This document shows, piece after piece, positions 729 through 46,858 of a stretch of DNA of 64,000 nt (positions within the stretch are counted from its first letter, which is position 1; each line of letters starts with the position of its first letter). Under the pieces are notes generated by a model, which saw only the letters and a program-made list of their open reading frames with translations, ran no database searches and was not told the DNA's origin. The stretch lies in IMG/VR virus record IMGVR_UViG_3300032116_000001, positions 248,001 to 312,000 of that record. One strand, 5' to 3'. A program made the position numbers and the translations under genes.

Positions 729-2969
729 ATGGTAGACATTTTGGGTTTAAAAATGACTGCAGATCAAGACAATTTAGTGGAAATCATCGGAGAAGTAACG
801 CGAGTTAATCGCTTTGACAGTGGATACGCCATTGTGACCGTTAAGAAAGGTAATACATCTGTCAAATTAGTGGGAGATATGCCAGGAATTTCCGAGGGTA
901 TGACAATCAAAGCCCTCGCTGAAAAAACTGTACACCAAAAATATGGAGAGCAGTTTAAAGTTCGGGATATTGAGGAAAATGGATTTGCTAATATAGATTC
1001 GCTCATTAAATATTTATCTAGCAACACATTTTCTGGAATAGGGGTTTCCACGGCCAGGTCTATTGTGCAAGTTTTTGGGATGGAAACATTCGATATTTTA
1101 GACAATGATCCAGAAAGACTCTATGATGTCCCAGGCCTATCAGATTCAAAAGTTGACTCTATTATTCAATGTTGGACAGAAAATCGAGAATTTAACAGAA
1201 TTATAGCCGAATTAGTTAAGTATGGCATGACTCCCATGATGGCCAAGAAAGTCTACAAATCGCTTGGCGAATCTGCTTTAGATATGATTCGAGAAAATAT
1301 CTACACATTAACACAAGTTTCGGGAATTGGATTTCTTAAAGCGGATGAAATTGCCCTTAAGTCGGGTGTTAAATTAGATAGTCCACAGCGCGTTGACGCC
1401 GCTGTTTTGTACGTACTCGATCAAGCGTTGTCCAGTGGACATTGTTATTTGCCTCTTCCTGATGTTTCTGAACAATCAGTGGGGCTTCTAAAAGGCAACG
1501 TGAACGCAACACATGTTATGGAGTCTGTCCGAAGGTTGGCTTCGTCATCTCAAATTGTGAACGAAAACCACAAAATATTTCTTTCAGGTATCCGCGAGGC
1601 TGAGAAAAATGTTGCTAGTATGATCACAGATATGTTGTGCTACAAGGGTGATGCCATATACAAAGACCTTGCAGCACTTAGAAAGGATTTAAAACAAATT
1701 GATGTCACAAAAGATATTGTTCTTGCTGAAAAGCAAGAGGAAGCCTTGTTCACGGCCCTTAATTCAAGGGTTGCGATTATAACTGGTGGCCCAGGTGTTG
1801 GTAAAACCACGGTCACGAAAGCCCTTTGTGCGCTTTTCGAAAGGCACAACATGGATTTTTTGCTTTGCGCACCTACGGGCCGCGCTGCAAAAAGGCTTTC
1901 CGAGGCCACAGGATCAGAGGCCTCAACTATACATCGATTGCTAAAAGGGGATTCAACTTCCCAAAAGTTTACTTATCATCAGGGAAATCCACTTTGGGCC
2001 GATGTTGTTGTCATTGATGAATCGTCAATGATGGACATTAGATTGTTTAGATCGATTTTATTTGCAATGGAAAGACACATGAGACTAATTATTGTGGGTG
2101 ATAAAGACCAATTACCATCCGTTGGACCAGGAAATGTATTAAGAGACCTTATTTCATCAGGCAAAGTCCCTTGTGTTAAGTTAGATCAAATATTCAGACA
2201 AAGCAAGGGGAATACTATTATTCCCGTAGCACACGACATTTTGCATGGCGTAGTGCCTGATTTGCCAACACCTATTGAATCTAAAGGAAGAAATTGCGTT
2301 TTAGTTGTCTCTGAAGATCAGGCAACACTGACCGATATGATCATTAAGTTGGTTACTCAATCATTGCCAAAGGCAGGTTTCAAAAATGAAGACATTCAAA
2401 TTCTAACCCCCATGCGTGGTCGGGGACTGGGGGTTGAAGATTTAAATCCACCTCTGCAAGCGGCACTTAATCCGCCATCTGATAAAAAGCCAGAAATCCA
2501 GGATAGAAATCGTATTTTTAGGGTTGGTGATCGCGTTATGCAAATTAAGAATAATTATAAAAAGGGCGATGCGGGGGTTTTCAACGGAGACATAGGTTAT
2601 ATTTCGTCTATTATAAATGACGAAAAAGATGGCACGACAATTTGGGTTAAATACCCCGATATGGAATCGCCAGTTGAGTATTCTCGCGAAGACTGGGATG
2701 AAATTATGCATTGTTTAGCGTGCACTGTTCATAAGTCTCAGGGTGCAGAATATCCTTGCGTAATTTTGGTTCAACATCCTTCCCAATATAATATGCTCCA
2801 ACGCAACTTGATTTACACTGGAGTGACTCGTGCCAAAAAGCTTTGTATTATTGCGGGCACTAAGAAAGCGCTAGAGATAGCAGTGGCAAATGACAGGGAA
2901 ATATCTCGCAATACAACTTTATCTGATCTGTTGAAAAATTTAGTTGACGATACTTCTAGGGCATCATAG
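729..2969 (+). CDS. recD2: RecD2-like SF1B helicase
   Basis: N-terminal HhH repeats (SGIGVSTA, GIGFLKAD), Walker A GGPGVGKT, APTGRAAKRL, IDESSM, VGDKDQLPSVGPG, TVHKSQGAEY, YTGVTRAK. True start may be ATG 753. Ends in TAG. Confidence 0.95.
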   Translation: MVDILGLKMTADQDNLVEIIGEVTRVNRFDSGYAIVTVKKGNTSVKLVGDMPGISEGMTIKALAEKTVHQKYGEQFKVRDIEENGFANIDSLIKYLSSNTFSGIGVSTARSIVQVFGMETFDILDNDPERLYDVPGLSDSKVDSIIQCWTENREFNRIIAELVKYGMTPMMAKKVYKSLGESALDMIRENIYTLTQVSGIGFLKADEIALKSGVKLDSPQRVDAAVLYVLDQALSSGHCYLPLPDVSEQSVGLLKGNVNATHVMESVRRLASSSQIVNENHKIFLSGIREAEKNVASMITDMLCYKGDAIYKDLAALRKDLKQIDVTKDIVLAEKQEEALFTALNSRVAIITGGPGVGKTTVTKALCALFERHNMDFLLCAPTGRAAKRLSEATGSEASTIHRLLKGDSTSQKFTYHQGNPLWADVVVIDESSMMDIRLFRSILFAMERHMRLIIVGDKDQLPSVGPGNVLRDLISSGKVPCVKLDQIFRQSKGNTIIPVAHDILHGVVPDLPTPIESKGRNCVLVVSEDQATLTDMIIKLVTQSLPKAGFKNEDIQILTPMRGRGLGVEDLNPPLQAALNPPSDKKPEIQDRNRIFRVGDRVMQIKNNYKKGDAGVFNGDIGYISSIINDEKDGTTIWVKYPDMESPVEYSREDWDEIMHCLACTVHKSQGAEYPCVILVQHPSQYNMLQRNLIYTGVTRAKKLCIIAGTKKALEIAVANDREISRNTTLSDLLKNLVDDTSRAS

Positions 2970-2973
2970 CAAA

Positions 2974-3004
2974 AGCCCTGCAAATGAAAAACATTTGCAG
3001 GGCT
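2974..3004 (+). terminator. Hairpin after recD2, probable terminator
   Basis: 13-bp stem AGCCCTGCAAATG / CATTTGCAGGGCT followed by a T-rich tract. Confidence 0.7.
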
Positions 3005-3023
3005 GCTTGGTTTTTGTTGAGAA
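2999..3023 (+). promoter_or_regulatory. Putative phage late promoter AGG-N18-AGAA
   Basis: Same spacing recurs at 7 intergenic sites in the window. Confidence 0.6.
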
Positions 3024-3087
3024 TTTTTATTAAGATATTGAGCAACTTTATTGTTCATCGTAACTTCTGAGGAGATTTAAACACAAA

Positions 3088-3930
3088 ATGTTAAGAAAAT
3101 TCGCCGAAACTGCCATGTGGCTTGACCAGCAGGGGCTTTTTGCTGAAGCTGATGTTGTAACTGACGTGCTTCGCAAATATGCTGCTAATGCCCTTTGGGA
3201 GGCAGATGACGAAAATGATGTTGAGGAAATTGACCCATATCATGCTCAGATGTATCACACAATTAAGAATTTAGACTTAAGCGACCCTGAACACCTAGAA
3301 ATTATTCGCGGCGCACATCCAGAACTTGCCGATGCGATAGAAAATTATACACCTGGCCGCAGAATACCAATGAAAGAGCCAATGCGGTATGGACCTCGGA
3401 CAGTAATGTTGCCCCCAGGATTTAAAAGCAATTTTGAAAAAAGACTCCCAGAGTTTTTTATGAGCCCAGATCAACTTCAACGCAACAGAGAGGCTTTTTA
3501 TGACAGACTCGATAAGGCCACACGCAACCGATCTCGTCGTGCAACTTTTGATTTAGATTATGCTTCTACAAGCAAACCTGGATATGAGCGGTCTTACATT
3601 TTTGATCCCGAATTAAATAGTCTAATGTCTTCTGACCCCGATTTTAGACCAAGCGAAAACAATGTTAGTCTTTATGACAAAAGAAAGCTTCGCGCACTTT
3701 TTGATCCAACATTTGATCTTGAGTCACTGGATGAAGACGAAAAATCTGGAAGAGAGCGCTATTTAGGCGTTGATCCCAAGACGGGTGAACCATACTCTCT
3801 TCCTAAGCAGATTGGTTGGGCTCACCGTCAAATTAAGCCCGAAAGTGTTTTAACATTCCGCGGTCACAAAGGCGAAGTCGATCCCGAAACTGGAAAGCGC
3901 AAGCCAAATTACTACTTTAAAGCCAGATAG
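3088..3930 (+). CDS. Hypothetical protein with N-terminal A-x2-LD-x2-G-x3-EAD motif; possible virion/internal protein
   Basis: AMWLDQQGLFAEADVVTDVLRKYA; GAGGAG SD; ends TAG-TAA. Confidence 0.75.
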   Translation: MLRKFAETAMWLDQQGLFAEADVVTDVLRKYAANALWEADDENDVEEIDPYHAQMYHTIKNLDLSDPEHLEIIRGAHPELADAIENYTPGRRIPMKEPMRYGPRTVMLPPGFKSNFEKRLPEFFMSPDQLQRNREAFYDRLDKATRNRSRRATFDLDYASTSKPGYERSYIFDPELNSLMSSDPDFRPSENNVSLYDKRKLRALFDPTFDLESLDEDEKSGRERYLGVDPKTGEPYSLPKQIGWAHRQIKPESVLTFRGHKGEVDPETGKRKPNYYFKAR

Positions 3931-3944
3931 TAAAAGGATACATT

Positions 3945-5009
3945 ATGGATAAGCCTTGGTTAAAATCAGGAATACAAAGGTTGGATGAGGCGGATTCCGC
4001 CCTTATCCGCGAATCTGATTTTCTTTACAAAGAGGCTATTCGCGGCGAGATGGACTGGGGAGGCTACGGAAGAACCGCGCTAGAGGGCGGAGCAGGAGGG
4101 GCTATCGGTGGCGCTCTTTTCGGGGGCGTGGGAGCTGTTCCTGGGGCTGCCATTGGTGCGGCGGGTAACGTCGCGATCAAAGGCATAACAGACATATGGT
4201 ACAATACTCGCTCGAACCAAGATAAAGCATCTTGGCAAGCTGGCGATCTTGAGGAGAGATTGAACAAACTTGCGGACTTAATTCAAGGGCAAGACTCAAC
4301 TCTAGCCTCGGTACTAAAGACATTAGGTAACCAATACAAAGAGTTTGTTGACGGGCATATTCAGGGAAGAAAATCTGAAAATTTTCAAAGCAATAGATTC
4401 AATATTTCTCCTGAAGAAATGACGCAAAAATTTCAGCAGGAATATGCTAATTTACAAAACTTAAGAGCCTCATCATACGAGAGTATTAATCAAATTGTCA
4501 GAATAGCATCATCTGCGGATAATCAAAACTATTTTATATCAAACTCTAACAATTCGCCATCTTCAAATTATGGCCATGACTTAGGCTCTTCCGCTAAGCA
4601 ATTAGGCACGGAATTAGGCACAGGTGCATTGGGTGGTAATGCTGGGGAATACGCAGTTAAGAAAACTGTTCAAAACCTTGCTCCCAATATGTTAAAAGGC
4701 GTGGGCAGCCTAAAGAGTATGGGCGTTGGATTAGTCGGCGAATTAGGTGTTGGAGCTATCTTTGATGCCATTGAAAATTTACAAGGTGCTCAAAAACTTT
4801 ATCACAATCAGTCAGTAGATATACAAAAAATTATCACAGAAGTTAACAGGCTTACAGGAAATGATCCTCAAGTATTAGCTGCTGGAAATCAAGTTTGGAC
4901 TTATGTTTTAGAAGGCAAAGAGCGAATTGATAATATGGTTCAAAACGCCCAGTCGTCATATGCACAAAATAAATCTGCGAACACTAATGTTAGTAGATTT
5001 AAAAGATAA
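3945..5009 (+). CDS. Hypothetical glycine-zipper protein; possible internal virion/ejection protein
   Basis: Two Gly/Ala-rich GxxxG segments (GGAGGAIGGALFGGVGAVPGAAIG; LGTGALGG...GELGVG) between helical regions. Confidence 0.7.
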   Translation: MDKPWLKSGIQRLDEADSALIRESDFLYKEAIRGEMDWGGYGRTALEGGAGGAIGGALFGGVGAVPGAAIGAAGNVAIKGITDIWYNTRSNQDKASWQAGDLEERLNKLADLIQGQDSTLASVLKTLGNQYKEFVDGHIQGRKSENFQSNRFNISPEEMTQKFQQEYANLQNLRASSYESINQIVRIASSADNQNYFISNSNNSPSSNYGHDLGSSAKQLGTELGTGALGGNAGEYAVKKTVQNLAPNMLKGVGSLKSMGVGLVGELGVGAIFDAIENLQGAQKLYHNQSVDIQKIITEVNRLTGNDPQVLAAGNQVWTYVLEGKERIDNMVQNAQSSYAQNKSANTNVSRFKR

Positions 5010-5014
5010 ATCTA

Positions 5015-5209
5015 ATGAAAAGCCCATGTATTAAGATTTGCAAACTTGACAACAATGTCTGTATTGCTTGCAAGCGATCATTAGAAGAAATACGTAATTG
5101 GTCTCAATATTCAGATGAACAAAGAGAATTAATTATGATGGATATTAAAAATAATCGATTTTCTATTGAGTGTTATATGTATAAACCCAATAATGAAGTT
5201 AAAAAATGA
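5015..5209 (+). CDS. DUF1289-family small Cys-rich protein
   Basis: SPCIKICKLD..VCIACKRSLEEIRNWS signature. Confidence 0.85.
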   Translation: MKSPCIKICKLDNNVCIACKRSLEEIRNWSQYSDEQRELIMMDIKNNRFSIECYMYKPNNEVKK

Positions 5210-5240
5210 AATTTTAACTTTGCTCTAAGCGGTTACTGGT

Positions 5241-6632
5241 ATGATTGATCCTAATAAAATTATCTCAGATGCAAATTGTGTTGTTTGCGGTACTCCACCT
5301 GAAGAAGGCTCAACTGACCAGCGTTACATTCAGTTTCATGATCGTAAAATATTTTTGTGCGGCAAGCATGCCGAGGCCTTTCATATTGGTGCTGTGATGG
5401 GTCAGCTAGAGCTAAATTCTGCATTAGCGGAATTTATTTTAAAAATGGACGATCCATTAAATTCTCAACAAATCAAAGAGCACATACTTGAAATGGTTCC
5501 GTCAGCACGGCGGCAACTTGAAGATAAGCAATTGCAAGCTCATATAAAAGGAACATATAAGGAGCAATCACCTAGAGAAATTTATGAATATCTTGACAAA
5601 AATGTTATTGGCCAAGAAGAAGCAAAAAGACGCATAAGTTTAGCAGTCTACGAACATTATAAAAACGCCCAAAGACGCGCAGATAGCCCGCTATTAGAAA
5701 AACAAAATATACTTATGCTTGGGCCTTCTGGAAGTGGAAAAACATTAATTGCAAATTCCATTGCGAAAATATTAGACGTTCCATTTGTGTCCGCCGATGC
5801 AACAAGTTATTCTCCCACAGGGTTTCAGGGCGCAGATGTTGATACCATTATTTTTGAAATGATGTACAAATCAAGCGGGGTACATCATGCCGCAGAACAA
5901 GGCATTGCATTTATTGACGAAATTGACAAGCTTTCAACACATGCAATGCAAGGCACAAAATCAGAGGGCTTAAACTACGCAACACAAAGTTCTTTACTTA
6001 AACTTATTGAGGGCAAAAAAGTAAAAGTGCCAATGCAAAATTTGGGCCACCCGCCTGGAACAATGACAATGGTGGATACAACCAAGATGCTTTTTATGTT
6101 CGGCGGGGCATTTAACGGACTTGCTGAGCAGGTGGGCAAGTTGATGGGATACTCTGGAAGAACCATTTCCTTATCCAAAAGAAATGAAGAAGATCGTATA
6201 GAATCTTCGATACGCTCGTATAATATTCTTGCCGAAGCGTCAACCGATGTGATCATAAAAGCGTTGATAGATTTTGGAATGAACACCGAGTTTATTGGTC
6301 GAATTCCAATTATTGTTCCGCTTGCGCCACTAACTAAAGAGCAACTTTACAAGTGCTTAATTGATTTGCCAAACTCGCCAGTTTCCAGATCGCAAATGCT
6401 TTTCGCGGAATCAGGAGTAAAATTGGAGTTTGAGGAAAGCATGCTTCAGGCAGTTGTTGAAACAACTGCCAAATCAGACACAGGAACTCGTGCTTTAAAT
6501 ACTCTTGTTAAAAGAGCTGTTAGCCAAGCCGCGTTTGATCTTTTAGGTTCAGAACCTTCCAGAAAGATCAAACATGTTGTTATAACAAATGAGTGCATTG
6601 CCAATCCAGAATCGTATGTTACAATTAATTAA
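5241..6632 (+). CDS. clpX: ClpX-like AAA+ ATPase (divergent)
   Basis: N-terminal CxxC...CxxH, LDKNVIGQEEAK, KQNILMLGPSGSGKT, FIDEIDK, LLKLIEG, EFIGRIP, TGTRAL. Confidence 0.9.
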   Translation: MIDPNKIISDANCVVCGTPPEEGSTDQRYIQFHDRKIFLCGKHAEAFHIGAVMGQLELNSALAEFILKMDDPLNSQQIKEHILEMVPSARRQLEDKQLQAHIKGTYKEQSPREIYEYLDKNVIGQEEAKRRISLAVYEHYKNAQRRADSPLLEKQNILMLGPSGSGKTLIANSIAKILDVPFVSADATSYSPTGFQGADVDTIIFEMMYKSSGVHHAAEQGIAFIDEIDKLSTHAMQGTKSEGLNYATQSSLLKLIEGKKVKVPMQNLGHPPGTMTMVDTTKMLFMFGGAFNGLAEQVGKLMGYSGRTISLSKRNEEDRIESSIRSYNILAEASTDVIIKALIDFGMNTEFIGRIPIIVPLAPLTKEQLYKCLIDLPNSPVSRSQMLFAESGVKLEFEESMLQAVVETTAKSDTGTRALNTLVKRAVSQAAFDLLGSEPSRKIKHVVITNECIANPESYVTIN

Positions 6633-6894
6633 GCCATGATTTAGCTACAAAGAATGCAGCAAGAAGCCAAACTAATCCGATTATAATTGCAGGGCCGACC
6701 CCTGATCCAACAAAAGCCGAAATCATAACCCATGTGCCAAAGGCGATGCCTCCTGTTACGGCAATATAGATCAACACACCCATAAAAAGCAAAGGTAAAA
6801 GGCTCCATTCCTTTCGAGAATTGGGCAGAGCGGCATAAAGAATGATCGTGCCAATCGCTGACATAATCACGAGATTAATGATATTTAAAAACAT
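6625..6894 (-). CDS. Small membrane protein (about 3 TM segments)
   Basis: Hydrophobic 89-aa ORF with AAGGA SD. Confidence 0.7.
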   Translation of the reverse strand: MFLNIINLVIMSAIGTIILYAALPNSRKEWSLLPLLFMGVLIYIAVTGGIAFGTWVMISAFVGSGVGPAIIIGLVWLLAAFFVAKSWLN

Positions 6895-6929
6895 GTGTTC
6901 CTTATTGTACTATATTATTTCTCTATTAT

Positions 6930-6945
6930 AAAAAAGGGGATTTTT
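6930..6945 (-). promoter_or_regulatory. 16-bp motif AAAAATCCCCTTTTTT, copy 1
   Basis: Exact copies at 38121 and 60097; each lies upstream of a gene start. Confidence 0.6.
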
Positions 6946-6952
6946 TGATTCA

Positions 6953-6977
6953 AGGTTTTTTTAGAAAAAATATTGAA
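6953..6977 (+). promoter_or_regulatory. Putative late promoter AGG-N18-TGAA
   Basis: Upstream of the 7007 gene; conserved spacing. Confidence 0.55.
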
Positions 6978-7006
6978 TTTATACTTATACCCTTGGGCAA
7001 GACACT

Positions 7007-8230
7007 ATGACTAATAAATTTTCAAAGACAAATCCAATTGAGCGCGTGTTGGATAATATGCGCGAAGCGGCCATAAACGCTGACTCAGAAAGAGTTGTAG
7101 TTGCGGCTGGTGAGCTAAAAAGTCTGTGGAATTTTTTCAGACGAACGCGAAGTCCGTTTAAAAATACGGATGAAGTCAAAGAGTTGTTTAAAGGGCACAC
7201 TCCAAGTGCCCAAAATGAAATTTTGAACAGAGTTCTTCAAGAAAAAACACTTGAGGCCTTGTCTCCAACAAAAAGAGGAGTTCAAAATATTGGCGTCGGA
7301 AACTTTATGCCTGATGACATGAAAAATCCAACAAAAATTCATGACAGTGACACTTTGCGAGCAATGATTGAGTCTGCTAATTTTGGCCAAGGACGAGGCC
7401 AAATTGGCAATCTAATACAGAAAATCATAGGTGATAACAGGCTAAAGCAAACATTAGAAAAACCACTTGATCCATCAATTGTCGTCAGGGTTGATAACTT
7501 TAATATGAACCCTAAACCTGTTACGATGATGGAATTACTCACCAATCCATCAGCGGCAAACCTGAAAAGAATTGACTCACAAGGCCATGCTGTTGATTAT
7601 GATCAGGTCGAGCTAAATAAAGAAGTAGACAAAATAGCAACTCAATTTGCTGAGCAATACAAAGATGTTGCAGTTTTTAATTATATGAAGGGACTGGCTT
7701 ATAAAGCTATTCTTGCTGTCATTGGTTTAAAGGCTGCGGCTGGTATTGCCATTCCTGCGGCTGCTGCAGCGACCATGGGTTCACCAAGTTCCACGGACAT
7801 ACAAAAATCACTCAATCCATCGCCCACTGCTCCAGTTTCGCCCAATAATACGCAAACAAATAGCTCAAGTTCTGGTCACCCGCACATGACTAACGGCAAC
7901 AATTTTGGTTCACTCGGAGGTATTCAGTCGGCTCCCGATATGTTTGGCAATGATACATTTACAAACAAAGTTGTTGATTATTCTTCTATGTTTAGAGAAA
8001 ATTCAACAAATGACTTACGAATAAGTCTGGCCCAATCTATGATTCAAGAAGCGCCAGAAGAGGCAAAAGAATACCTTGCGTCGATTCCTGATGTTCATCA
8101 ATTTGTTCAAAATATCATTAGCATTATTAATCAACATGGTGGGCCAGAGTCCACGAAAGCAATAGAACATGCAAATCAGTATGTGGGAACAATTGCTGAC
8201 AAAACTGATTTAATATCAAAAACAATTTAA
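7007..8230 (+). CDS. Hypothetical protein; possible virion internal protein
   Basis: 407 aa with one Ala-rich hydrophobic segment and an S/P/N-rich linker. Confidence 0.75.
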   Translation: MTNKFSKTNPIERVLDNMREAAINADSERVVVAAGELKSLWNFFRRTRSPFKNTDEVKELFKGHTPSAQNEILNRVLQEKTLEALSPTKRGVQNIGVGNFMPDDMKNPTKIHDSDTLRAMIESANFGQGRGQIGNLIQKIIGDNRLKQTLEKPLDPSIVVRVDNFNMNPKPVTMMELLTNPSAANLKRIDSQGHAVDYDQVELNKEVDKIATQFAEQYKDVAVFNYMKGLAYKAILAVIGLKAAAGIAIPAAAAATMGSPSSTDIQKSLNPSPTAPVSPNNTQTNSSSSGHPHMTNGNNFGSLGGIQSAPDMFGNDTFTNKVVDYSSMFRENSTNDLRISLAQSMIQEAPEEAKEYLASIPDVHQFVQNIISIINQHGGPESTKAIEHANQYVGTIADKTDLISKTI

Positions 8231-8247
8231 GGCAATAGGGGTATTTT

Positions 8248-8988
8248 ATGAATTCAAACAATTATCAAAGTTTAGTTAAAATGGCGTCTAAAGCCGATAA
8301 CACGGGAGATTACAAAACAGCAGACGCTATTACAGATTTTCTTAGAATTTCCCAGGCTTTAACTTTAAACAAGGCCCTTCAGGGTGTTCCTGGAATGGAA
8401 ATGAGCACTCAAAACCTTGGCGACTCTGCCGAAGGAGCATACAAAGGTTATTTCAAGGGTAATCCTCGGGGAACATTCCAGGATTCATCATCATCTGCAC
8501 CCGATGCACCGATGGTATCACAGGCTAACAATCCTTTAAACTGGGAGGGTAAAAGCGCGGAAGAAATAGGAAAAATGATGTATGATGAATCAATTGCGCT
8601 GCGAAATGACCCAAGCATGGTTTACAGAAATCAGCAAAGCCTAATGCAATATGCAGAATTTCTCCGTCGATATCCAAATTTACCACAGCCCGTTAGACAG
8701 CAAATGTACCAGGCTATTTCTGGGATGCTTTTGGGACAAATGTGGGGTCAGAGCCCGCAAGTTATGCAACAAACTATGGCTCGATTATTCCAATCGTGGC
8801 CAGACATGCCAGCCGATTTGAAAAACTTTTTGAACTCTGAAGCACAAAAGATTATGCAAATGCAATCAACGAATCAGCAAATGCAGGGTGGTAGCGCAAA
8901 TTATTCAGGCCAATCATATAACAGCATGCCAACAACCAACTTACTTGGCTATCAGGGCGCGAGCGGAACACCAACTCCAATTACTTAA
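8248..8988 (+). CDS. Q/M-rich hypothetical protein with the shared N-terminal motif
   Basis: LVKMASKADNTGDYKTADAITDFLRISQ. Confidence 0.75.
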   Translation: MNSNNYQSLVKMASKADNTGDYKTADAITDFLRISQALTLNKALQGVPGMEMSTQNLGDSAEGAYKGYFKGNPRGTFQDSSSSAPDAPMVSQANNPLNWEGKSAEEIGKMMYDESIALRNDPSMVYRNQQSLMQYAEFLRRYPNLPQPVRQQMYQAISGMLLGQMWGQSPQVMQQTMARLFQSWPDMPADLKNFLNSEAQKIMQMQSTNQQMQGGSANYSGQSYNSMPTTNLLGYQGASGTPTPIT

Positions 8989-9009
8989 CTTGCTGTATAA
9001 AAATCTTAA

Positions 9010-9873
9010 ATGAAAAAGTTTGTTAAATTACCTGTCGGCCAAGCTTGCGAGTGCCCGTTTTACCTCCAGGATGTATCTGGTGATAACAAGTGTGTTTTTA
9101 AATTCTTTGTAACACAAGACAAACTTTCAAAATCTTTTTTAGAGCCAGAAGATTTCAGTGAAGACACCTGGAAGGAAGATTGCGAAGGTTTATATTCCCA
9201 GTGTTCTGTTTTGCCTATAATTTGGCAAATGGATGAAGATATCGAAAGCAATGATGAAGAAATCACAGAAGAAGATCAACTAGAAAGTGAAGATTCTGAA
9301 GATTACGACGATTCTGATGAGCCTGATGATTACGAGGATGGAGATGAACATGAAGTTGTTCAAGTTAGCATTCATCAGGTTGATAATCCTTATGCTGTGA
9401 AGTCTGATATTTTGGTTTTGCCTACAAACATTGGCTTAACAATAGATGACTATAAATTAAACCGCCTTTCAAAAGGCTTAATTCAAGAAGAATGTGATAA
9501 AATTGCCGAAGATTCTGTGAAGATGGGCCACGTTTACCTAACAAGCAATGGTGGAGAAAAAAGCTTAGTAGTTCCCAAGGCTATCGTTCATGCAGTTGTG
9601 GCTGGATTTAGCAGGTTGGTCAATGAGCAAGACATAAAAACAGCAATGAGAAAATCTTTATTAATGGCCGAAGAATTAGGCGCAAATAAAGTAGTAATTC
9701 TTCCATGTGATTGTGGCACTCATGACATTGCTCACACGGCCAGAGTGCAGCTATCTGCAATATATACATTTTTAAACAGTGTTGAAACAAAATCAATCAC
9801 CCATGTATATATTGTTATGGAAGATGAAGAAAGTTTTAATATTTTCCAGGAATACTTTAATAGAATATTCTAA
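9010..9873 (+). CDS. Macro-domain protein with Cys-rich N-terminus and acidic linker
   Basis: DILVLPTN, GHVYLTSNG, KAIVHAVV, AEELGANKVVILP..CG. Confidence 0.8.
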   Translation: MKKFVKLPVGQACECPFYLQDVSGDNKCVFKFFVTQDKLSKSFLEPEDFSEDTWKEDCEGLYSQCSVLPIIWQMDEDIESNDEEITEEDQLESEDSEDYDDSDEPDDYEDGDEHEVVQVSIHQVDNPYAVKSDILVLPTNIGLTIDDYKLNRLSKGLIQEECDKIAEDSVKMGHVYLTSNGGEKSLVVPKAIVHAVVAGFSRLVNEQDIKTAMRKSLLMAEELGANKVVILPCDCGTHDIAHTARVQLSAIYTFLNSVETKSITHVYIVMEDEESFNIFQEYFNRIF

Positions 9874-9893
9874 TAATACAAAGAGGAAAACCA

Positions 9894-10247
9894 ATGAGTG
9901 GCTCTGCTAAAACAACAAAATCATCTGAGAATTATCAGAAAATTTTGCAAGCTATGTTGGATAGTTACAGGCATCCAGTTTGGATTGTAGAGGATGATCA
10001 TATTCGACTCATGAATGAACCTGCGAAGGAGCTTGAAAGCCAGGGTTTTGTAATACAGAACTTATCGCAAAACATGAATGTCGGAGAAGTGAAAATTTTG
10101 AGCTTTAAAGGTAGAGACATAAGTATTAAAAAATCAATGATAAAAAATGGTGGAACTGTATTTTTGCATGAGGTGAGTTTTGAAACTCCATCCACCGCGA
10201 GGCTTAAAGCATCTACGGCTAAATTAAGAAAAGCGATTACTAGGTAA
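9894..10247 (+). CDS. Hypothetical protein with PAS-like N-terminus
   Basis: LQAMLDSYRHPVWIVEDDHIRLMNEPAKEL resembles the start of a PAS fold. Confidence 0.6.
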   Translation: MSGSAKTTKSSENYQKILQAMLDSYRHPVWIVEDDHIRLMNEPAKELESQGFVIQNLSQNMNVGEVKILSFKGRDISIKKSMIKNGGTVFLHEVSFETPSTARLKASTAKLRKAITR

Positions 10248-10266
10248 TTTATTAATTGAACTCGAA

Positions 10267-10310
10267 AAAAGAATCTTGGGCATGTTTTCAAAACGGTCAA
10301 AGATTCTTTT
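10267..10310 (+). terminator. Inverted repeat, possible terminator
   Basis: AAAAGAATCTT...AAGATTCTTTT between genes. Confidence 0.45.
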
Positions 10311-10344
10311 TAATTATAAAAGAATCAAAAGAGAGTGTTATACA

Positions 10345-11043
10345 ATGAGTGAAAAAAATTCAAATAATTCATCTATAGAAGATTTGAAAATGTTGCGCAA
10401 TGAAATCACAGCGCAAACTGAAGCTTATGTGGAATTTTCTAATGCACTCGTCCGTATTTACGATCTGCAAACAGAGATTAAAGCAGACATTGAAAAACTC
10501 AGCGAATCTGACTCAAAAGAAGTACGCGAAATTTTTGAGAAAATAACAACAATGAGCGAACTGCTGAAAACTTATCAGCAGTATCAACGCGAAGGCGATG
10601 CATTAATGTCGGAAGAAATTGAAGAGTTTAATGCAGTTTTGTCTCATTTTGGCTCTGAATTGGAGTTGTTTAAGGCCAAAATTGAGCAGCTTATTAGTGA
10701 CGATGGCAAGCTCGGCAGTGCCAATAGAGAGGCTGTCGAAAGTGCTTTAAATGATATGATTTCTGAATTTGAAATAATGGCAAAGGATACTCGTGCTCAT
10801 TTTGAAAGTGAAAGCCAAGCAAGAAAACAAGTTATTGAAAAGTTAGATCAAATAACAAATTATCTCGAATCTTTTAAACAAGTTCAGACAGGTTGGACCG
10901 AATGGAAAAAAAGAATTGGATGGGGAATTGCGGGCATTTCTGCTTTAATTGCAGTTCTTATGGCACTGGCTCAATTTAATGCATTGAAAATTGAATATTT
11001 CCCAAAAAACCATGAAGCAACGCCTGTGACAAGGCCACGATAA
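10345..11043 (+). CDS. Coiled-coil protein with C-terminal TM helix
   Basis: Heptad-rich sequence, then WGIAGISALIAVLMALA; start moved to ATG 10345. Confidence 0.75.
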   Translation: MSEKNSNNSSIEDLKMLRNEITAQTEAYVEFSNALVRIYDLQTEIKADIEKLSESDSKEVREIFEKITTMSELLKTYQQYQREGDALMSEEIEEFNAVLSHFGSELELFKAKIEQLISDDGKLGSANREAVESALNDMISEFEIMAKDTRAHFESESQARKQVIEKLDQITNYLESFKQVQTGWTEWKKRIGWGIAGISALIAVLMALAQFNALKIEYFPKNHEATPVTRPR

Positions 11044-11046
11044 GAT

Positions 11047-11439
11047 ATGAACGTTAAAGTAATTTCTGGAGCCAATAATAACATTGATGCAACGGGCCTT
11101 AAAAACAAACTTAAAGCCATAGGCTTGCATGAAAAGCACGATGTGATTGCGCTTAATGATGATCAAGCAAACTTTGATCTTAATATATGGTTTGGCGACA
11201 ATCCTCCTGAGAATACAGAGGCCTTAATAATGAATTCCAGTGAATTTAGTGGCCATGAAATGCTAAAGAAATATCCAAGATTATTATTATTGGCTCAAAT
11301 AGTTTCTACAAATGGATTAATACCTGAGTTTTATGCTGTTTATGAAAGAACGTCGTATAAGCCAGTGTTTTTTATTAACAAACACGAAATGGAAGGTTAT
11401 TTTGTGGACAAAATAGCATCAGTACAGGAGCTACCATAA
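11047..11439 (+). CDS. Hypothetical protein
   Basis: 130-aa ORF in a tightly packed operon. Confidence 0.7.
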   Translation: MNVKVISGANNNIDATGLKNKLKAIGLHEKHDVIALNDDQANFDLNIWFGDNPPENTEALIMNSSEFSGHEMLKKYPRLLLLAQIVSTNGLIPEFYAVYERTSYKPVFFINKHEMEGYFVDKIASVQELP

Positions 11440-11759
11440 TGTCAGAAAGAAAACCAGCAACAATTTCTTGCAAATGTGTAGAATGCGGAATGTCGTTTTA
11501 TGAAAAAGGCGATGCAGTTGGCGTCATGCCCTCGATGCGGCCTGTAAAAAAATGGCAGCGTGGTGATCCTTTAACAACATGGGCAGACTGGGTCATGCAC
11601 ATACAAACACACTGTCCAGACTGCAGAATAGTTGTGCCACCACCCGATTGTGTAAACGACTTGCGGGCTCAACTTTCTGAATTCAGGCATGCAAATTCAC
11701 AAGATTTTGAGCTTGAGTCTGATGAGTACACAAGATTATTTAATGAAAGGCTTAAGTAA
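11439..11759 (+). CDS. Zn-ribbon hypothetical protein
   Basis: CVEC...CPDC; TAATG overlap with the upstream gene. Confidence 0.7.
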   Translation: MSERKPATISCKCVECGMSFYEKGDAVGVMPSMRPVKKWQRGDPLTTWADWVMHIQTHCPDCRIVVPPPDCVNDLRAQLSEFRHANSQDFELESDEYTRLFNERLK

Positions 11760-11806
11760 TGTGTTAATTTGACTTATTTTTTACGAATAGATAAATAAGT
11801 CAAATT

Positions 11807-12589
11807 ATGATCGACGGCAAAATTTCTATAGACGTGGTGTTACTAGGTCCGCCAGCAAGTGGAAAAGGCACTGTTGTGTCTTATTTTTTGGATAAATATA
11901 ATTGGAATGCAATTGTTCCTGGCGATATTTATAGAAAAATACGCGACGAAGACAGCGACCTGGGCGCTTTAGTTAGAGAATCTCTTGAAAGGTACCATCA
12001 TTGTCCCGATGATTTAACAAATAGAATTATTCACAAAGCTGTTGATGATTGTCTAAAAATTAATCAACTCTTGGATTTACCAAATTCTAGATTTGTTTTT
12101 GATGGTTATCCAAGGTCTTTTGAGCAATTGGATTATTTAGATAAAAATTTCAATGTTTCTGCATTTATTCATCTTGATGCGCCGATTGAAACCACACTAG
12201 CTGCCGCAATCAATCGAAGATATTGTTCTGGTTGCAATAAGGTGTTTTCAAAGCAGTCTCCCCCAAAAATCACGGGTCCGAACATTTCGTGCATAGACGG
12301 TGAAGCTTCAAGACCTTATTTAACAAATACTTGTCTTGAAAACGAAGCCCAGTGGCTTTCGTGCTCGGATTCTTGCGCTGCTACATCAGAAAACAACTGG
12401 ATTACTCGATGGGACGATAGCGAGGAAAAGTATTATGAAAGAATAAGCGCATTTAACCAGAACACACTGCCTGTAATTGAGGCAATTTCACAAAGACCAA
12501 ATTATAAAAAGTTTCAAATTATCGGTAACGATAAGGGCTTAAGTGAAATTGAAGATTGGCTTAACGCTGTCTTAGGTAATAATTGTTAA
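11807..12589 (+). CDS. adk: Adenylate kinase family protein with expanded Cys-rich LID
   Basis: LLGPPASGKGT, GDIYR, FDGYPRS..Q, RRYCxxC, RWDD. Confidence 0.85.
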   Translation: MIDGKISIDVVLLGPPASGKGTVVSYFLDKYNWNAIVPGDIYRKIRDEDSDLGALVRESLERYHHCPDDLTNRIIHKAVDDCLKINQLLDLPNSRFVFDGYPRSFEQLDYLDKNFNVSAFIHLDAPIETTLAAAINRRYCSGCNKVFSKQSPPKITGPNISCIDGEASRPYLTNTCLENEAQWLSCSDSCAATSENNWITRWDDSEEKYYERISAFNQNTLPVIEAISQRPNYKKFQIIGNDKGLSEIEDWLNAVLGNNC

Positions 12590-12870
12590 TTTTTTCTTTG
12601 AACTCCATGAAGAGCTTCTTGAACTTCATTTTCAAAGACATTTGTACTCATAATTTCATCGTTGCTGACACCATCAAGACTAAGTTTCTGCAAAATTATG
12701 TTAATCAAATCGGATATCTTCTTGTCCTTAAGTCTTATGTCGTCTTGATTGTTGCTTTCGGGATAAGAAGATATAGCCTCGTCAATTTCGTTAGCTTCGT
12801 CAATGAAGCCCGATTCATCCAAGTCGTTTGCAATTTGGGCCAATCTTCTGATCACATCAACACTGATCAT
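12586..12870 (-). CDS. Small hypothetical protein with the shared motif
   Basis: RRLAQIANDLDESGFIDEANEIDEAI. Confidence 0.75.
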   Translation of the reverse strand: MISVDVIRRLAQIANDLDESGFIDEANEIDEAISSYPESNNQDDIRLKDKKISDLINIILQKLSLDGVSNDEIMSTNVFENEVQEALHGVQRKN

Positions 12871-12873
12871 GAT

Positions 12874-13182
12874 TTACCTCTTTGTAAATATATCTACAAA
12901 TATTTGATCAATTATTTTAGACGCCTCTGCAGATCGACCAGATTCTATAATAGCAGAGGCTTTTTCCATCATTTGCTCAGTGGTTGGATTATTTTGAAGG
13001 AAAGATTTTTGTGCATCTATGCAAGTGGGGCACTGCCAATAAGATACAAAAAGAGGTCTGTGTTTGCGACAAACAGCTTTGCCACAATTATCACAGAAAG
13101 CCCGCGCCCAGCCTTTCACCTGTCTGTTGCAGATAGAACAAATCGGGTCACTATAGAATTTCTTAATTGGTGCGCCTGGCAT
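12874..13182 (-). CDS. Zn-finger protein with the shared motif at its C-terminus
   Basis: CSIC, CDNC, CRKH, CPTC, then KASAIIESGRSAEASKIIDQI. Confidence 0.75.
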   Translation of the reverse strand: MPGAPIKKFYSDPICSICNRQVKGWARAFCDNCGKAVCRKHRPLFVSYWQCPTCIDAQKSFLQNNPTTEQMMEKASAIIESGRSAEASKIIDQIFVDIFTKR

Positions 13183-13206
13183 GGTTTCTTAACCTTATGT
13201 TTTTAT

Positions 13207-13231
13207 TTCTCTAATTTAAATAATCAATCCT
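13207..13231 (-). promoter_or_regulatory. Putative late promoter AGG-N18-AGAA
   Basis: Upstream of the 13182 gene. Confidence 0.55.
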
Positions 13232-13452
13232 GGTTGAACTTCAGCCAACATATAACGTTTTTTGAGATTGTTCTCAAAAAAAATCCCCTAAATTTATTTA
13301 AGCAAAATGCTAAAATATGGGGAAACAAGGCGGACACTGCCTGCAAACCGATTGTGTCGCCCGCGGCCACGCCTGCGTTGCTGGTTTTTTTCGGTACCAG
13401 CACAAAGACGTTGCGTAAATAAAACCTGCGGGAGAATAAAGGTAAAAAAAAT

Positions 13453-46064: not shown

Positions 46065-46422
46065 GGGGGCATAAGGGATCGATTGACGTTGCTATCTTAT
46101 GTTTGCAAGGCGCGGATGTATCCTTGGCCGCGATAACAAAGGATGCAAAAAGTAAATGCGGAAAACAACTTCGCTTTCGCTGCTTAATTAAGCTGGCGCA
46201 TGAACCTGAGACGAGTCTGTAGTTAATGGGGATTGTAAAATAAATCAGACTTAGCTTTGAAACTTCGGCTTGTAGTTGAAAAAGCGATATTAATCAAGCT
46301 GCTGTCAAGAAAGTGCTGGCCTCTAGCCAAAGCTTGACTTAAGATTAATATGAGGAGAACCTTGTGGCGAGCATAGGCTCTGTACGGACAACAAGCGGGT
46401 TCAAATCCCGCTGCCTCCACCA
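46065..46422 (+). ncRNA. ssrA: tmRNA with tag (A)AENNFAFAA
   Basis: 5' GGGGGCA pairs with 3' TGCCTCC-ACCA including the G3-U Ala determinant; T-arm GCGGG-TTCAAAT-CCCGC; resume codon GCG at 46158, TAA at 46185-46187. Confidence 0.95.
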
Positions 46423-46691: not shown

Positions 46692-46762
46692 GCTCCATTA
46701 GCTCAATGGTAGAGCTGGGGTCTCTAAAACCTTGGTCGCGGGTTCGATTCCCGTGTGGAGCA
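46692..46762 (+). tRNA. tRNA with CUA anticodon (amber suppressor) no. 1; CCA not encoded
   Basis: Acceptor GCTCCAT/GTGGAGC, D-arm GCTC..GAGC, anticodon arm GGGGT-CTCTAAA-ACCTT (CTA at 46724-46726), T-arm GCGGG-TTCGATT-CCCGT, A73. Confidence 0.85.
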
Positions 46763-46783: not shown

Positions 46784-46858
46784 GCTCTAGTAACTCAGTG
46801 GTAGAGTGGCCCTCTCTAAAAGGGCATGTCGCGGGTTCGAGTCCCGCCTAGAGCGCCA
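46784..46858 (+). tRNA. tRNA with CUA anticodon (amber suppressor) no. 2
   Basis: Acceptor GCTCTAG/CTAGAGC, D-arm ACTC..GAGT, anticodon arm GCCCT-CTCTAAA-AGGGC (CTA at 46816-46818), T-arm GCGGG-TTCGAGT-CCCGC, G73-CCA. Confidence 0.93.

What the first reader, a model, noticed from the sequence alone, without database searches (positions are those of the whole stretch)
3088..13182. Shared helical module (A-x2-hD-x2-G-x4-AD-xh) in unrelated putative late proteins
3088: AMWLDQQGLFAEADVVTDVL. 8248: ASKADNTGDYKTADAITDFL. 12870(-): ANDLDESGFIDEANEIDEAI. 13182(-), C-terminal: ASAIIESGRSAEASKIIDQI. The proteins are otherwise dissimilar, and all lie in units behind the putative late promoter. Short h-[RK]-x-[AS] motifs flank it or recur nearby (LRKYA, LVKMA, LRISQ, IRRLAQ, IVRIA, LTKVAQ, ISKVA). 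Inference: a capsid-targeting or scaffold-docking signal with prohead-protease cleavage sites, analogous to the T4 internal-protein targeting sequence.
Basis: partly seen in the sequence, partly recalled or inferred. Interest (0 to 1): 0.6.

Follow-up and report, generated by a model that had tools for sequence, protein, structure and literature searches.

The report
Shared helical-hairpin tag in jumbo-phage proteins
Three of the four reported sites are copies of a real, undescribed 33-38-residue helical hairpin that uncultivated relatives of Bacillus phage G attach to the ends of 14-21 unrelated proteins per genome; it is probably a docking tag, and its partner (the capsid interior or something else) is still unknown.

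Summary
P0001 (3088-3930 +), P0002 (8248-8988 +) and P0003 (12586-12870 -) each start with one module: helix, D-x-x-G turn, helix. The fourth site (C-terminus of 12874-13182 -) scores 0.6 bits and is not a member. The flanking "h-[RK]-x-[AS] cleavage sites" are the module's own helix 1 and the end of helix 2.

The window lies in a 378,848-bp phage genome whose capsid protein, portal and protease resemble those of Bacillus phage G. That genome has 17-18 module proteins, nearly all with the module at the true N-terminus and otherwise unrelated. A profile search of 1.84 billion proteins gives 1,847 cluster representatives. Four other large phage contigs carry 14-21 copies each, often in tandem gene arrays. 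Phage G, 50,697 GenBank phages, Pfam, PHROGs and the PDB show nothing. Cellular genomes gave only two short contigs that look like phage fragments.

The module resembles one solitary TPR-type repeat. One member is a syntenic core gene between terminase and portal. Recurrent passengers are cell-wall hydrolases.

Best reading: a portable docking tag, with the assembling head as the leading candidate for the partner. This is unproven; the one complex prediction gave no verdict. Cleavage and late-promoter control are unsupported.

The parts
3088..3198 (+). Module copy at the N-terminus of P0001 (aa 1-37)
   Evidence: Leave-one-out profile E 3e-7. Foreign-only profile E 1.4e-6. Conserved in orthologs P0115 and P0293.
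3088..3930 (+). P0001, 280 aa: module, acidic linker, then a conserved passenger of unknown fold. It starts a new unit after the terminator at 2974-3004.
   Evidence: No Pfam or PHROGs family above the curated cut-offs.
8257..8367 (+). Module copy at the N-terminus of P0002 (aa 4-40)
   Evidence: Leave-one-out E 7e-8. Foreign-only profile E 6e-4, which is borderline.
8248..8988 (+). P0002, 246 aa: module followed by a Q/N/S/M-rich low-complexity passenger
   Evidence: 48% Q+N+S+T+G+P. No family hits. No relatives in IMG/VR.
12745..12858 (-). Module copy at the N-terminus of P0003 (aa 5-42)
   Evidence: Leave-one-out E 4e-7. Foreign-only profile E 2e-9.
12586..12870 (-). P0003, 94 aa: module plus an acidic tail. 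It lies 3 nt downstream of P0004 on the minus strand.
   Evidence: Its only similarity to other phage genomes is the module itself.
12874..13182 (-). P0004, 102 aa, Cys-rich and zinc-ribbon-like.
   Evidence: 0.6 bits, E 82. Absent from all profile hit lists.
4479..4592 (+). Doubtful half-module (helix 1 only) inside the 354-aa protein 3945-5009
   Evidence: E 0.29, below the noise level of the shuffled control.

Best explanation
The motif is a self-contained module of about 33-38 residues. It forms an amphipathic helix, a D-x-x-G turn and a second helix, that is, a helical hairpin. Its sequence pattern is that of a single TPR_10/12-type repeat, but it stands alone at a protein terminus and is followed by a linker.

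A clade of uncultivated aquatic jumbo phages with a phage-G-type capsid uses it as a portable tag on 14-21 otherwise unrelated proteins per genome. I infer that it is a protein-protein docking unit that brings these proteins to one common partner. My leading candidate for that partner is the assembling head (prohead interior or core). Tagged proteins would then be co-packaged and delivered with the DNA, making this an independently evolved functional analogue of the T4 capsid-targeting leader and of encapsulin cargo-loading peptides.

Shown: the module is real, is under protein-level selection, is restricted to viruses, sits at termini, is multi-copy, and folds as a hairpin in models.
Inferred: docking to a common partner.
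Speculative: that the partner is the head. I see no evidence that the module is cleaved off.

The confidence given is for the full chain including the head as partner. For 'real portable module' alone it is about 0.9, and for 'docking tag with a common partner' about 0.6.
For: Reality and reach:
- The iterated profile finds 17-18 ORFs in the genome. 11 of 18 reach E<1e-4 in leave-one-out tests.
- 1,847 cluster representatives reach E<=1e-3 among 1.84e9 proteins.
- Of the best 149, 116 carry a copy within 12 residues of the N-terminus, 27 at the C-terminus and 18 at both.

Protein-level selection: in the G004 array, 43% of identical residues use different codons.

Virus restriction:
- A strict peptide pattern gives 64 loci in IMG/VR.
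- It gives only 2 in 596 Gb of prokaryote genomes, both on short contigs that look like phage fragments.

Copy number: 17, 17, 14 and 21 copies in four other large phage contigs.

Fold:
- AF2 gives helix-turn-helix with pLDDT 74-90.
- hhalign against TPR_10/12 repeats gives 96% probability.

Tag-like behaviour:
- Passengers are unrelated.
- Module-only mini-proteins of 46-75 aa exist, as do module-linker-module proteins.

Link to the head:
- The 153-aa member is present and syntenic between terminase and portal in 35 of 35 long related loci. Its N-terminal module is conserved.
- The rest of that protein is highly conserved but predicted non-globular.
- Passengers include GH108 lysozyme + PG_binding, an M15-like peptidase and LysM.
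- G-type capsid protein genes occur in 7 of 9 module-bearing large contigs; the other two are 67% and 38% complete.
- None of the roughly 37 early-promoter-driven genes carries the module.
- The tandem variable arrays parallel the T4 internal-protein loci (PMC3012670).
Against: - No proteomic or binding data exist, and no cultured phage carries the module.
- Phage G shares capsid protein, portal and protease but has no copy. The module is therefore not part of the basic capsid assembly of this lineage.
- C-terminal, internal and multiple copies are unlike a cleavable leader.
- Some passengers are unexpected as packaged cargo: a CCA-adding enzyme homolog, and AP2, FHA and ferritin-like domains.
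- The window's three members lie among replication-type genes (RecD2-like helicase, ClpX-like ATPase), not structural genes.
- BLAST found no phage-encoded receptor gene shared by the module-bearing genomes.
Confidence: 0.35

Rival explanations
1. Self-associating 'sticker'. Modules bind one another (hairpin on hairpin, as neighbouring TPR repeats stack). They would assemble tagged proteins into a multi-protein network or body in the infected cell. Two- and three-module proteins would act as multivalent scaffolds, and module-only proteins as caps. The capsid need not be involved.
For: - Many hits carry 2-3 copies separated by long, probably disordered linkers, often one at each end.
- The two-module protein P0055 folds with pTM 0.64 as four helices, consistent with the two hairpins packing together.
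- A lone TPR-like hairpin normally needs a packing partner (established knowledge of TPR folds).
- BLAST found no dedicated receptor gene shared by the module genomes.
Against: - Most proteins in any one genome carry a single copy.
- I could not inspect the contacts in the P0055 model, and it came from a single sequence.
- The conserved exposed acidic residues (D14, E21, D23, D26) suggest a basic partner surface as readily as self-pairing.
Confidence: 0.25
2. Host-factor-binding domain. The hairpin binds a conserved host protein. It is carried by many host-takeover or counter-defence effectors, and the module-only proteins would be simple inhibitors.
For: - Arrays of small, fast-evolving, mostly orphan genes are typical of phage accessory and anti-defence loci.
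- The module sequence stays about 50-60% identical between phages that share only 13-23 BLAST-detectable genes. This suggests a conserved target.
- Passenger types such as AP2, FHA and zinc ribbons act inside cells.
Against: - No member is driven by the early leaderless promoter motif.
- One member is a core gene of the terminase-portal block.
- The marine and freshwater carriers span 34-43% GC, so hosts probably differ widely.
- The module is absent from all 50,697 deposited phages, whatever their host.
Confidence: 0.15
3. One reading: a T4-like N-terminal propeptide that is removed by the prohead protease at h-[RK]-x-[AS] sites flanking the motif.
For: - The module is mostly N-terminal.
- A prohead protease domain related to phage G gp19 is encoded at L008:87-4367.
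- The end of helix 2 is often K-[KR]-h-A-Q.
Against: - The cited motifs are helix 1 and the end of helix 2 of the fold itself. They also occur once per 211 aa by chance.
- The columns after the module are variable.
- C-terminal and internal copies cannot be leaders.
- There is no sequence similarity to the roughly 10-aa T4 leader and no conserved Glu-ended site.
Confidence: 0.08
4. There is no common function. The hairpin is just a stable N-terminal cap spread by gene duplication and shuffling, or the similarity is chance or compositional.
For: Short helical motifs are easy to over-interpret. Some weak members (E 0.01-7 in leave-one-out) may be noise.
Against: - E-values reach 1e-15 within the genome and 4e-20 in 1.84e9 proteins.
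- The shuffled control gives a best hit of only 9e-4.
- Ten columns are near-invariant across 144 foreign copies.
- Codon variation shows purifying selection.
- The module is retained on unrelated passengers in phages that share almost no other genes.
Confidence: 0.05

Closest known systems
T4 capsid-targeting sequence (CTS) of internal proteins IPI-III, Alt, gp67 and gp68
   Same: A short conserved terminal element is shared by otherwise diverse proteins, which are partly encoded in hypervariable tandem loci. In T4 it directs them into the scaffolding core for packaging and injection (PMC3012670).
   Different: From my own knowledge, the T4 leader is about 10 residues, is strictly N-terminal and is removed by gp21 after Glu. 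The module here is a 33-38-residue folded hairpin with no sequence similarity to it. It also occurs at C-termini, internally and in multiple copies, has no conserved cleavage motif, and has no evidence of packaging.
TPR repeats of the TPR_10/TPR_12 (kinesin-light-chain) type
   Same: The pattern is the same over helix A, the turn and the start of helix B (L-x-x-L-A-N-x-L-x-x-x-G-x-x-x-E-A). hhalign gives 96% probability. True TPR_12 proteins appear among the low-scoring multi-repeat hits.
   Different: The module is solitary and terminal rather than in tandem arrays of three or more. No Pfam TPR model detects it even at E<=1. It has its own conserved acidic positions (D14, D23, D/T26). It is restricted to viruses.
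Coat-binding helix-turn-helix of scaffolding proteins (P22 gp8 C-terminus) and encapsulin cargo-loading peptides
   Same: These are small terminal elements that tether a protein to the interior of an HK97-fold shell. Encapsulin cargo tags can be N- or C-terminal, and can be repeated (my own knowledge).
   Different: There is no sequence similarity. Binding to the capsid protein was not supported in the single prediction, which gave no verdict. The P22 element is basic, whereas this module has a conserved acidic face.
Conserved N-terminal anchor domains of multi-tailspike phages
   Same: A conserved N-terminus sits on variable C-terminal parts, with the genes in tandem arrays.
   Different: The passengers here are small (46-390 aa), often disordered or enzymatic, and are not long beta-helical receptor-binding proteins.

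Membership tests
T4-type capsid-targeting sequence | Conserved terminal element shared by otherwise unrelated proteins in variable loci | tested here: met
   Passengers are unrelated once the module is masked. Tandem arrays occur in G001, G003 and G004.
T4-type capsid-targeting sequence | About 10-residue, strictly N-terminal leader homologous to the T4 IP leaders | tested here: not met
   The module is a 33-38-aa hairpin. 27 of 149 best hits carry a C-terminal copy and 24 carry only internal copies. No T4-like family was hit.
T4-type capsid-targeting sequence | Removal by the prohead protease at a conserved site (L/I-x-E in T4) | tested here: inconclusive
   No conserved site follows the module; columns 34-38 are variable. 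Cleavage itself cannot be tested in silico.
T4-type capsid-targeting sequence | Tagged proteins are present inside the virion | not testable with these tools
   No cultured carrier exists, so there are no proteomes.
TPR repeat (Pfam clan CL0020) | Helix-turn-helix unit with the TPR residue pattern | tested here: met
   AF2 gives hairpins. hhalign against TPR_10/12 repeats gives 96.3% probability over 26 columns. Caveat: those repeats were picked because the module profile had hit them.
TPR repeat (Pfam clan CL0020) | Recognised by curated TPR profiles | tested here: not met
   No TPR family was hit for any module protein, even at E<=1, while a true TPR control scored 1e-89.
TPR repeat (Pfam clan CL0020) | Tandem arrays of three or more repeats forming a superhelix | tested here: not met
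   There is usually one copy per protein, at a terminus and followed by a linker.
Scaffold-type coat-binding hairpin / cargo-loading peptide | Direct binding to the HK97-fold major capsid protein | tested here: inconclusive
   Capsid protein (A5) + module (A2) complex prediction scored 0.02. The tool's verdict is 'no answer', which counts neither for nor against.

The most novel reading that the evidence does not exclude
A whole clade of abundant aquatic jumbo phages has independently invented a universal cargo tag. It is a solitary TPR-like hairpin that loads 15-20 different proteins per genome into the head for co-injection: lysins, nucleic-acid enzymes and small orphan effectors. The tag would then mark the injected proteome of uncultivated phages directly from sequence, and could serve as a programmable capsid-loading handle.
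Probability: 0.3. Interest if true: 0.8.

Novelty: new variant of a known kind. Interest (0 to 1): 0.62.

Why it matters
- The module defines a large domain family that Pfam, PHROGs and the PDB do not detect. It has up to 1,847 clusters at 50% identity and appears confined to uncultivated jumbo phages related to phage G.
- It is used 14-21 times per genome on unrelated proteins.
- Whatever the partner is, the tag groups a set of orphan proteins that must meet at one place. That makes the organisation of these phages experimentally approachable: one bait should recover the hub.
- If the hub is the prohead, the tag would predict packaged or injected proteins from sequence alone. It would also be a second, independent example of T4-style cargo targeting.

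Tried and rejected
- Pfam and PHROGs on P0001-P0004 and all other members: no family covers the module.
- ESM Atlas feature search with the module: best scores 0.84-0.87, below the useful range.
- PDB profile search: only designed or consensus TPRs, at E>=0.04.
- Foldseek of the two-module model against the PDB: nothing at E<=0.001, only generic helical bundles.
- Complex prediction, capsid protein + module: score 0.02, 'no answer'. This is not evidence either way.
- tblastn of three module variants and of the 153-aa member against 50,697 GenBank phages: no module match.
- Megablast of window 729-6632 against the same phage collection: no match.
I repeated it with the closer alignment A4.
- Pfam PF25209 does not detect even this genome's own capsid protein. 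I used alignment A5 instead.
- Search for a shared receptor gene: BLAST between G000, G003 and G004 leaves only 10 common genes, all ordinary (NUDIX, ArdC-like, UDP-glucose dehydrogenase, DnaB, UvsW, PhoH, ligase, epimerase, GT2, CCA-adding enzyme). BLAST is too insensitive to exclude structural proteins.
- Late promoter: no shared upstream motif is visible by eye. K-mer enrichment found an early leaderless motif and a TGTATAA motif, and neither precedes the window's members. The sigma-70 scan is not above the shuffles.
- P0001 and P0002 have no relatives in IMG/VR. P0001 has only close orthologs in the large protein set.
- PHROGs on the ten neighbours of the 153-aa gene: uninformative.
- DNA-level conservation as the cause of the motif: rejected, because synonymous codons vary.
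- TAG recoding, suggested by two tRNA-CUA genes: rejected for now, because reading TAG as sense barely lengthens ORFs.
- I could not identify which of the 142 hits carried the weak T7 capsid-assembly (scaffold) match.


Full report
**1. What is at the coordinates**

- P0001 (3088-3930 +, 280 aa), P0002 (8248-8988 +, 246 aa) and P0003 (12586-12870 -, 94 aa) begin with a similar stretch.
- P0004 (12874-13182 -, 102 aa) has a vaguely similar C-terminal stretch.

The window is bases 248,001-312,000 of a single 378,848-bp virus contig of 40.6% GC. IMG/VR/CheckV rate it complete.

**2. Is it more than chance?**

A regular expression found eight copies in the genome's six-frame ORFs. A profile built from these and iterated converged on 17-18 ORFs, aligned almost without gaps over 38 columns (alignment A2).
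- Leave-one-out test: 11 of 18 copies reach E<1e-4 against all 2,319 ORFs. Four more copies reach 0.003-0.02, and three are marginal.
- A profile made only from foreign sequences recovers the same set. A shuffled ORF set gives a best hit of 9e-4.
- P0004 scores 0.6 bits (E 82) and is not a member.
- With the module masked, only two pairs of the 18 proteins show any similarity.

The "h-[RK]-x-[AS]" elements are the start of helix 1 and the end of helix 2 of the module. The pattern occurs once per 211 residues in this proteome.

**3. Anatomy**

The consensus comes from 144 foreign copies: h-h-x-[SK]-L-x-K-[IL]-A-N-x-L-D-x-x-G-[LF]-x-K-E-A-D-x-h-[DT]-x-h-h-K-[KR]-h-A-Q.
- Near-invariant positions are L6, A10, N11, L13, D14, G17, E21, A22, D23 and D/T26.
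- After correcting over-long ORF calls, the module sits within the first 1-10 residues in most proteins of this genome.
- Exceptions: one C-terminal copy, two or three internal copies, and one protein with two copies.

AlphaFold2 models:
- The 153-aa member, with a 38-row alignment, is helix 3-20, turn, helix 23-39 at pLDDT 74-86.
- A two-module 95-aa protein folds as two such hairpins (pLDDT 82, pTM 0.64).

Selection acts on the protein. Among 14 copies in contig G004, 61% of residues are identical on average, and 43% of those identical residues use different codons.

**4. Distribution**

- A profile search of 1.84 billion cluster representatives gave 1,847 with E<=1e-3 and 43 with E<=1e-10.
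- Of the best 149, 116 have a copy at the N-terminus, 27 at the C-terminus and 18 at both.
- About eight of the best 150 are true TPR_10/12 repeat proteins hit weakly many times. The figure of 1,847 is therefore an upper bound.
- A strict peptide pattern finds 64 loci in IMG/VR. It finds 2 in 596 Gb of prokaryote genomes. Both of those are 3.7-7.4-kb MAG contigs with two module genes each and similarity to the phage contigs, so they are probably mis-binned phage fragments.
- Whole-record scans give 17, 17, 14 and 21 matches in four large IMG/VR contigs, and none in the 497-kb phage G genome.
- tblastn with three module variants finds no module match in 50,697 GenBank phage records.
- Pfam, PHROGs and the PDB have nothing for it.

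**5. What kind of phage**

- Terminase (114,897-118,121), portal (130,479-132,941) and a head-protease domain at the start of a 1,426-aa protein were found with PHROGs.
- The portal is 29.6% identical to phage G gp14.
- The 284-aa protein at 139,986-140,840 is 47.7% identical to the phage G major capsid protein gp27. The protease domain is 36.7% identical to gp19.
- The capsid-protein family has more than 900 clusters in metagenomes.
- G-type capsid protein genes are present in G001 and G002 (91% identity), G003 (42%), and in G005, G006 and G008, which were reached only through the module. Two fragments (67% and 38% complete) show none.
- G000 shares only 23 and 13 BLAST-detectable genes with G003 and G004. 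The module therefore spans deep divergence within a G-like super-clade, yet phage G itself lacks it.

**6. What is attached to it**

Passengers are mostly orphans.

Recognisable passengers:
- GH108 lysozyme + PG_binding in this genome (15,307-16,233 minus).
- An M15-type peptidase signature in G004.
- LysM (two proteins), zinc ribbons, FHA, AP2, ferritin-like, EF-hand/dockerin, and one weak T7 scaffold match.
- A CCA-adding-enzyme homolog in G004 with a C-terminal copy.

Other architectures:
- Module-only proteins of 46-75 aa.
- Module, long linker, module proteins.
- Tandem arrays: G004 has 12 consecutive module genes in 8.7 kb, and G001 and G003 have similar arrays.
- In this genome the members form small clusters at 61.5-62.5 kb, 120.5-122.3 kb, 331.8-333.9 kb and 346.1-350.1 kb, plus the three in the window.

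P0001-P0004 have no orthologs even in G001, whose capsid protein is 91% identical. P0001 has only close orthologs elsewhere, and its full-length orthologs keep the module.

**7. Link to morphogenesis**

The 153-aa member lies between terminase and portal. In all 35 related loci of at least 15 kb, the block terminase, g364, the 153-aa gene, g174, g164, g329, g286, g328 and g519 is present in the same order. The portal follows in the 32 loci that reach that far.
- The N-terminal module of the 153-aa protein is conserved across 38 orthologs. Most of them have a 3-residue shortening of helix 2.
- Its C-terminal 110 residues are highly conserved but predicted non-globular. I take this to mean that it folds onto a partner.

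A TGTATAA (extended -10-like) motif precedes this operon and the portal gene.

A different, very strong motif, ATCGGATATATAA placed 3-4 nt before the start codon, marks about 37 genes at 1-60 kb, plus one at 366 kb. None of them is a module gene.

P0001 follows a 13-bp-stem terminator at 2974-3004.

**8. Mechanism**

Six properties together indicate a portable docking unit with a common partner:
- terminal position;
- a linker after the module;
- unrelated passengers;
- many copies per genome;
- module-only proteins and two-module proteins;
- strong conservation across phages that share little else.

Reasons to favour the assembling head as the partner:
- the syntenic core member;
- the recurrence of cell-wall hydrolases, which tailed phages commonly carry in the virion (my own knowledge);
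- co-distribution with one capsid lineage;
- exclusion from the early regulon;

Reasons for caution:
- phage G lacks the module;
- C-terminal and internal copies exist;
- some passengers are unexpected as cargo;
- the window's members sit beside a RecD2-like helicase and a ClpX-like ATPase;
- BLAST found no shared receptor gene.

The single complex prediction allowed (capsid protein + module) returned 'no answer' and is not evidence.

I put head targeting at about 0.3-0.35, self-association without a capsid role at 0.25, and a host target at 0.15. Cleavage at [RK]-x-A is unsupported.

**9. Comparison with known systems**

- The module works like the T4 CTS in logic but fails its defining features of length, position and homology.
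- It resembles one TPR_10/12 repeat (hhalign 96%). It is solitary and no curated TPR model sees it.
- It is not related by sequence to scaffold coat-binding hairpins or to encapsulin tags.

**10. Verdict**

This is a real, widespread and apparently undescribed phage module. The functional interpretation is plausible in outline but unproven, and wrong in its details (cleavage sites, late promoter). I used no sequencing-read tools and took no contig for human.

Noticed in passing
G000 1-60 kb and 366 kb (e.g. L001:1961, L001:2931, L001:3637, L003:9711-19348); outside the window: About 37 copies of ATCGGATATATAA lie 3-4 nt upstream of start codons of small genes on both strands. This looks like an early promoter that gives leaderless mRNAs. 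None occur in the window.
   Followed up: partly
window 8994, 27183(-), 42533, 44222, 62422; also upstream of the terminase operon and the portal gene (L007:109, L007:16470): A TGTATAA(T) motif, like an extended -10 element, is enriched in intergenic regions outside the early region. It is a possible middle or late promoter.
   Followed up: partly
window 46065-46422 (+): Phage-encoded tmRNA (Rfam RF00023, 91 bits) with tag peptide AENNFAFAA. A ClpX-like AAA+ ATPase is encoded at window 5241-6632.
   Followed up: partly
window 46692-46762 and 46784-46855 (+): Two tRNA genes with a CUA anticodon (amber suppressors) lie next to two tRNA-Lys genes. TAG still ends 48 genes, and reading it as sense barely lengthens ORFs, so there is no sign of recoding.
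   Followed up: partly
window 12583-13422 (+) versus 12586-13182 (-): A 279-aa TTG-started plus-strand ORF overlaps both minus-strand genes. The minus strand is favoured by the significant module in P0003, the CxxC pairs in P0004, and the local loss of GC and AT skew.
   Followed up: partly
window 729-3004: RecD2-type helicase (729-2969), followed by a 13-bp-stem intrinsic terminator at 2974-3004. P0001 therefore starts a new transcription unit.
   Followed up: yes
L008:87-4367 (G000 133087-137367): The head-maturation protease domain (aa 54-243, 37% identical to phage G gp19) is the N-terminus of a 1,426-aa protein. The remaining ~1,180 residues match no Pfam family and no further PHROGs family beyond the N-terminal 243 residues.
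   Followed up: no
L012:10827-13913 (G000 219827-222913): UvsW-like helicase interrupted by an intein splicing domain.
   Followed up: no
L007:6465-6926 (G000 120465-120926): The C-terminal 110 residues of the 153-aa member contain an almost invariant Pro/Gly-rich block (E-G-x-L-x-G-x-D-x-V-P-G-P-A-Y-[IV]-D-P-G), yet are predicted disordered (pLDDT<50). This looks like a conserved segment that folds only on a partner.
   Followed up: partly
G004:C1:110494-112848 (-): A 784-aa homolog of this phage's tRNA nucleotidyltransferase (G000 183320-185488) carries a module copy at its extreme C-terminus. The G000 protein has none.
   Followed up: no
window 9010-9873 (+): The 287-aa protein has a weak Macro-domain match (E 2e-4, just under the Pfam cut-off). 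It is 46% identical to a protein in G001.
   Followed up: no
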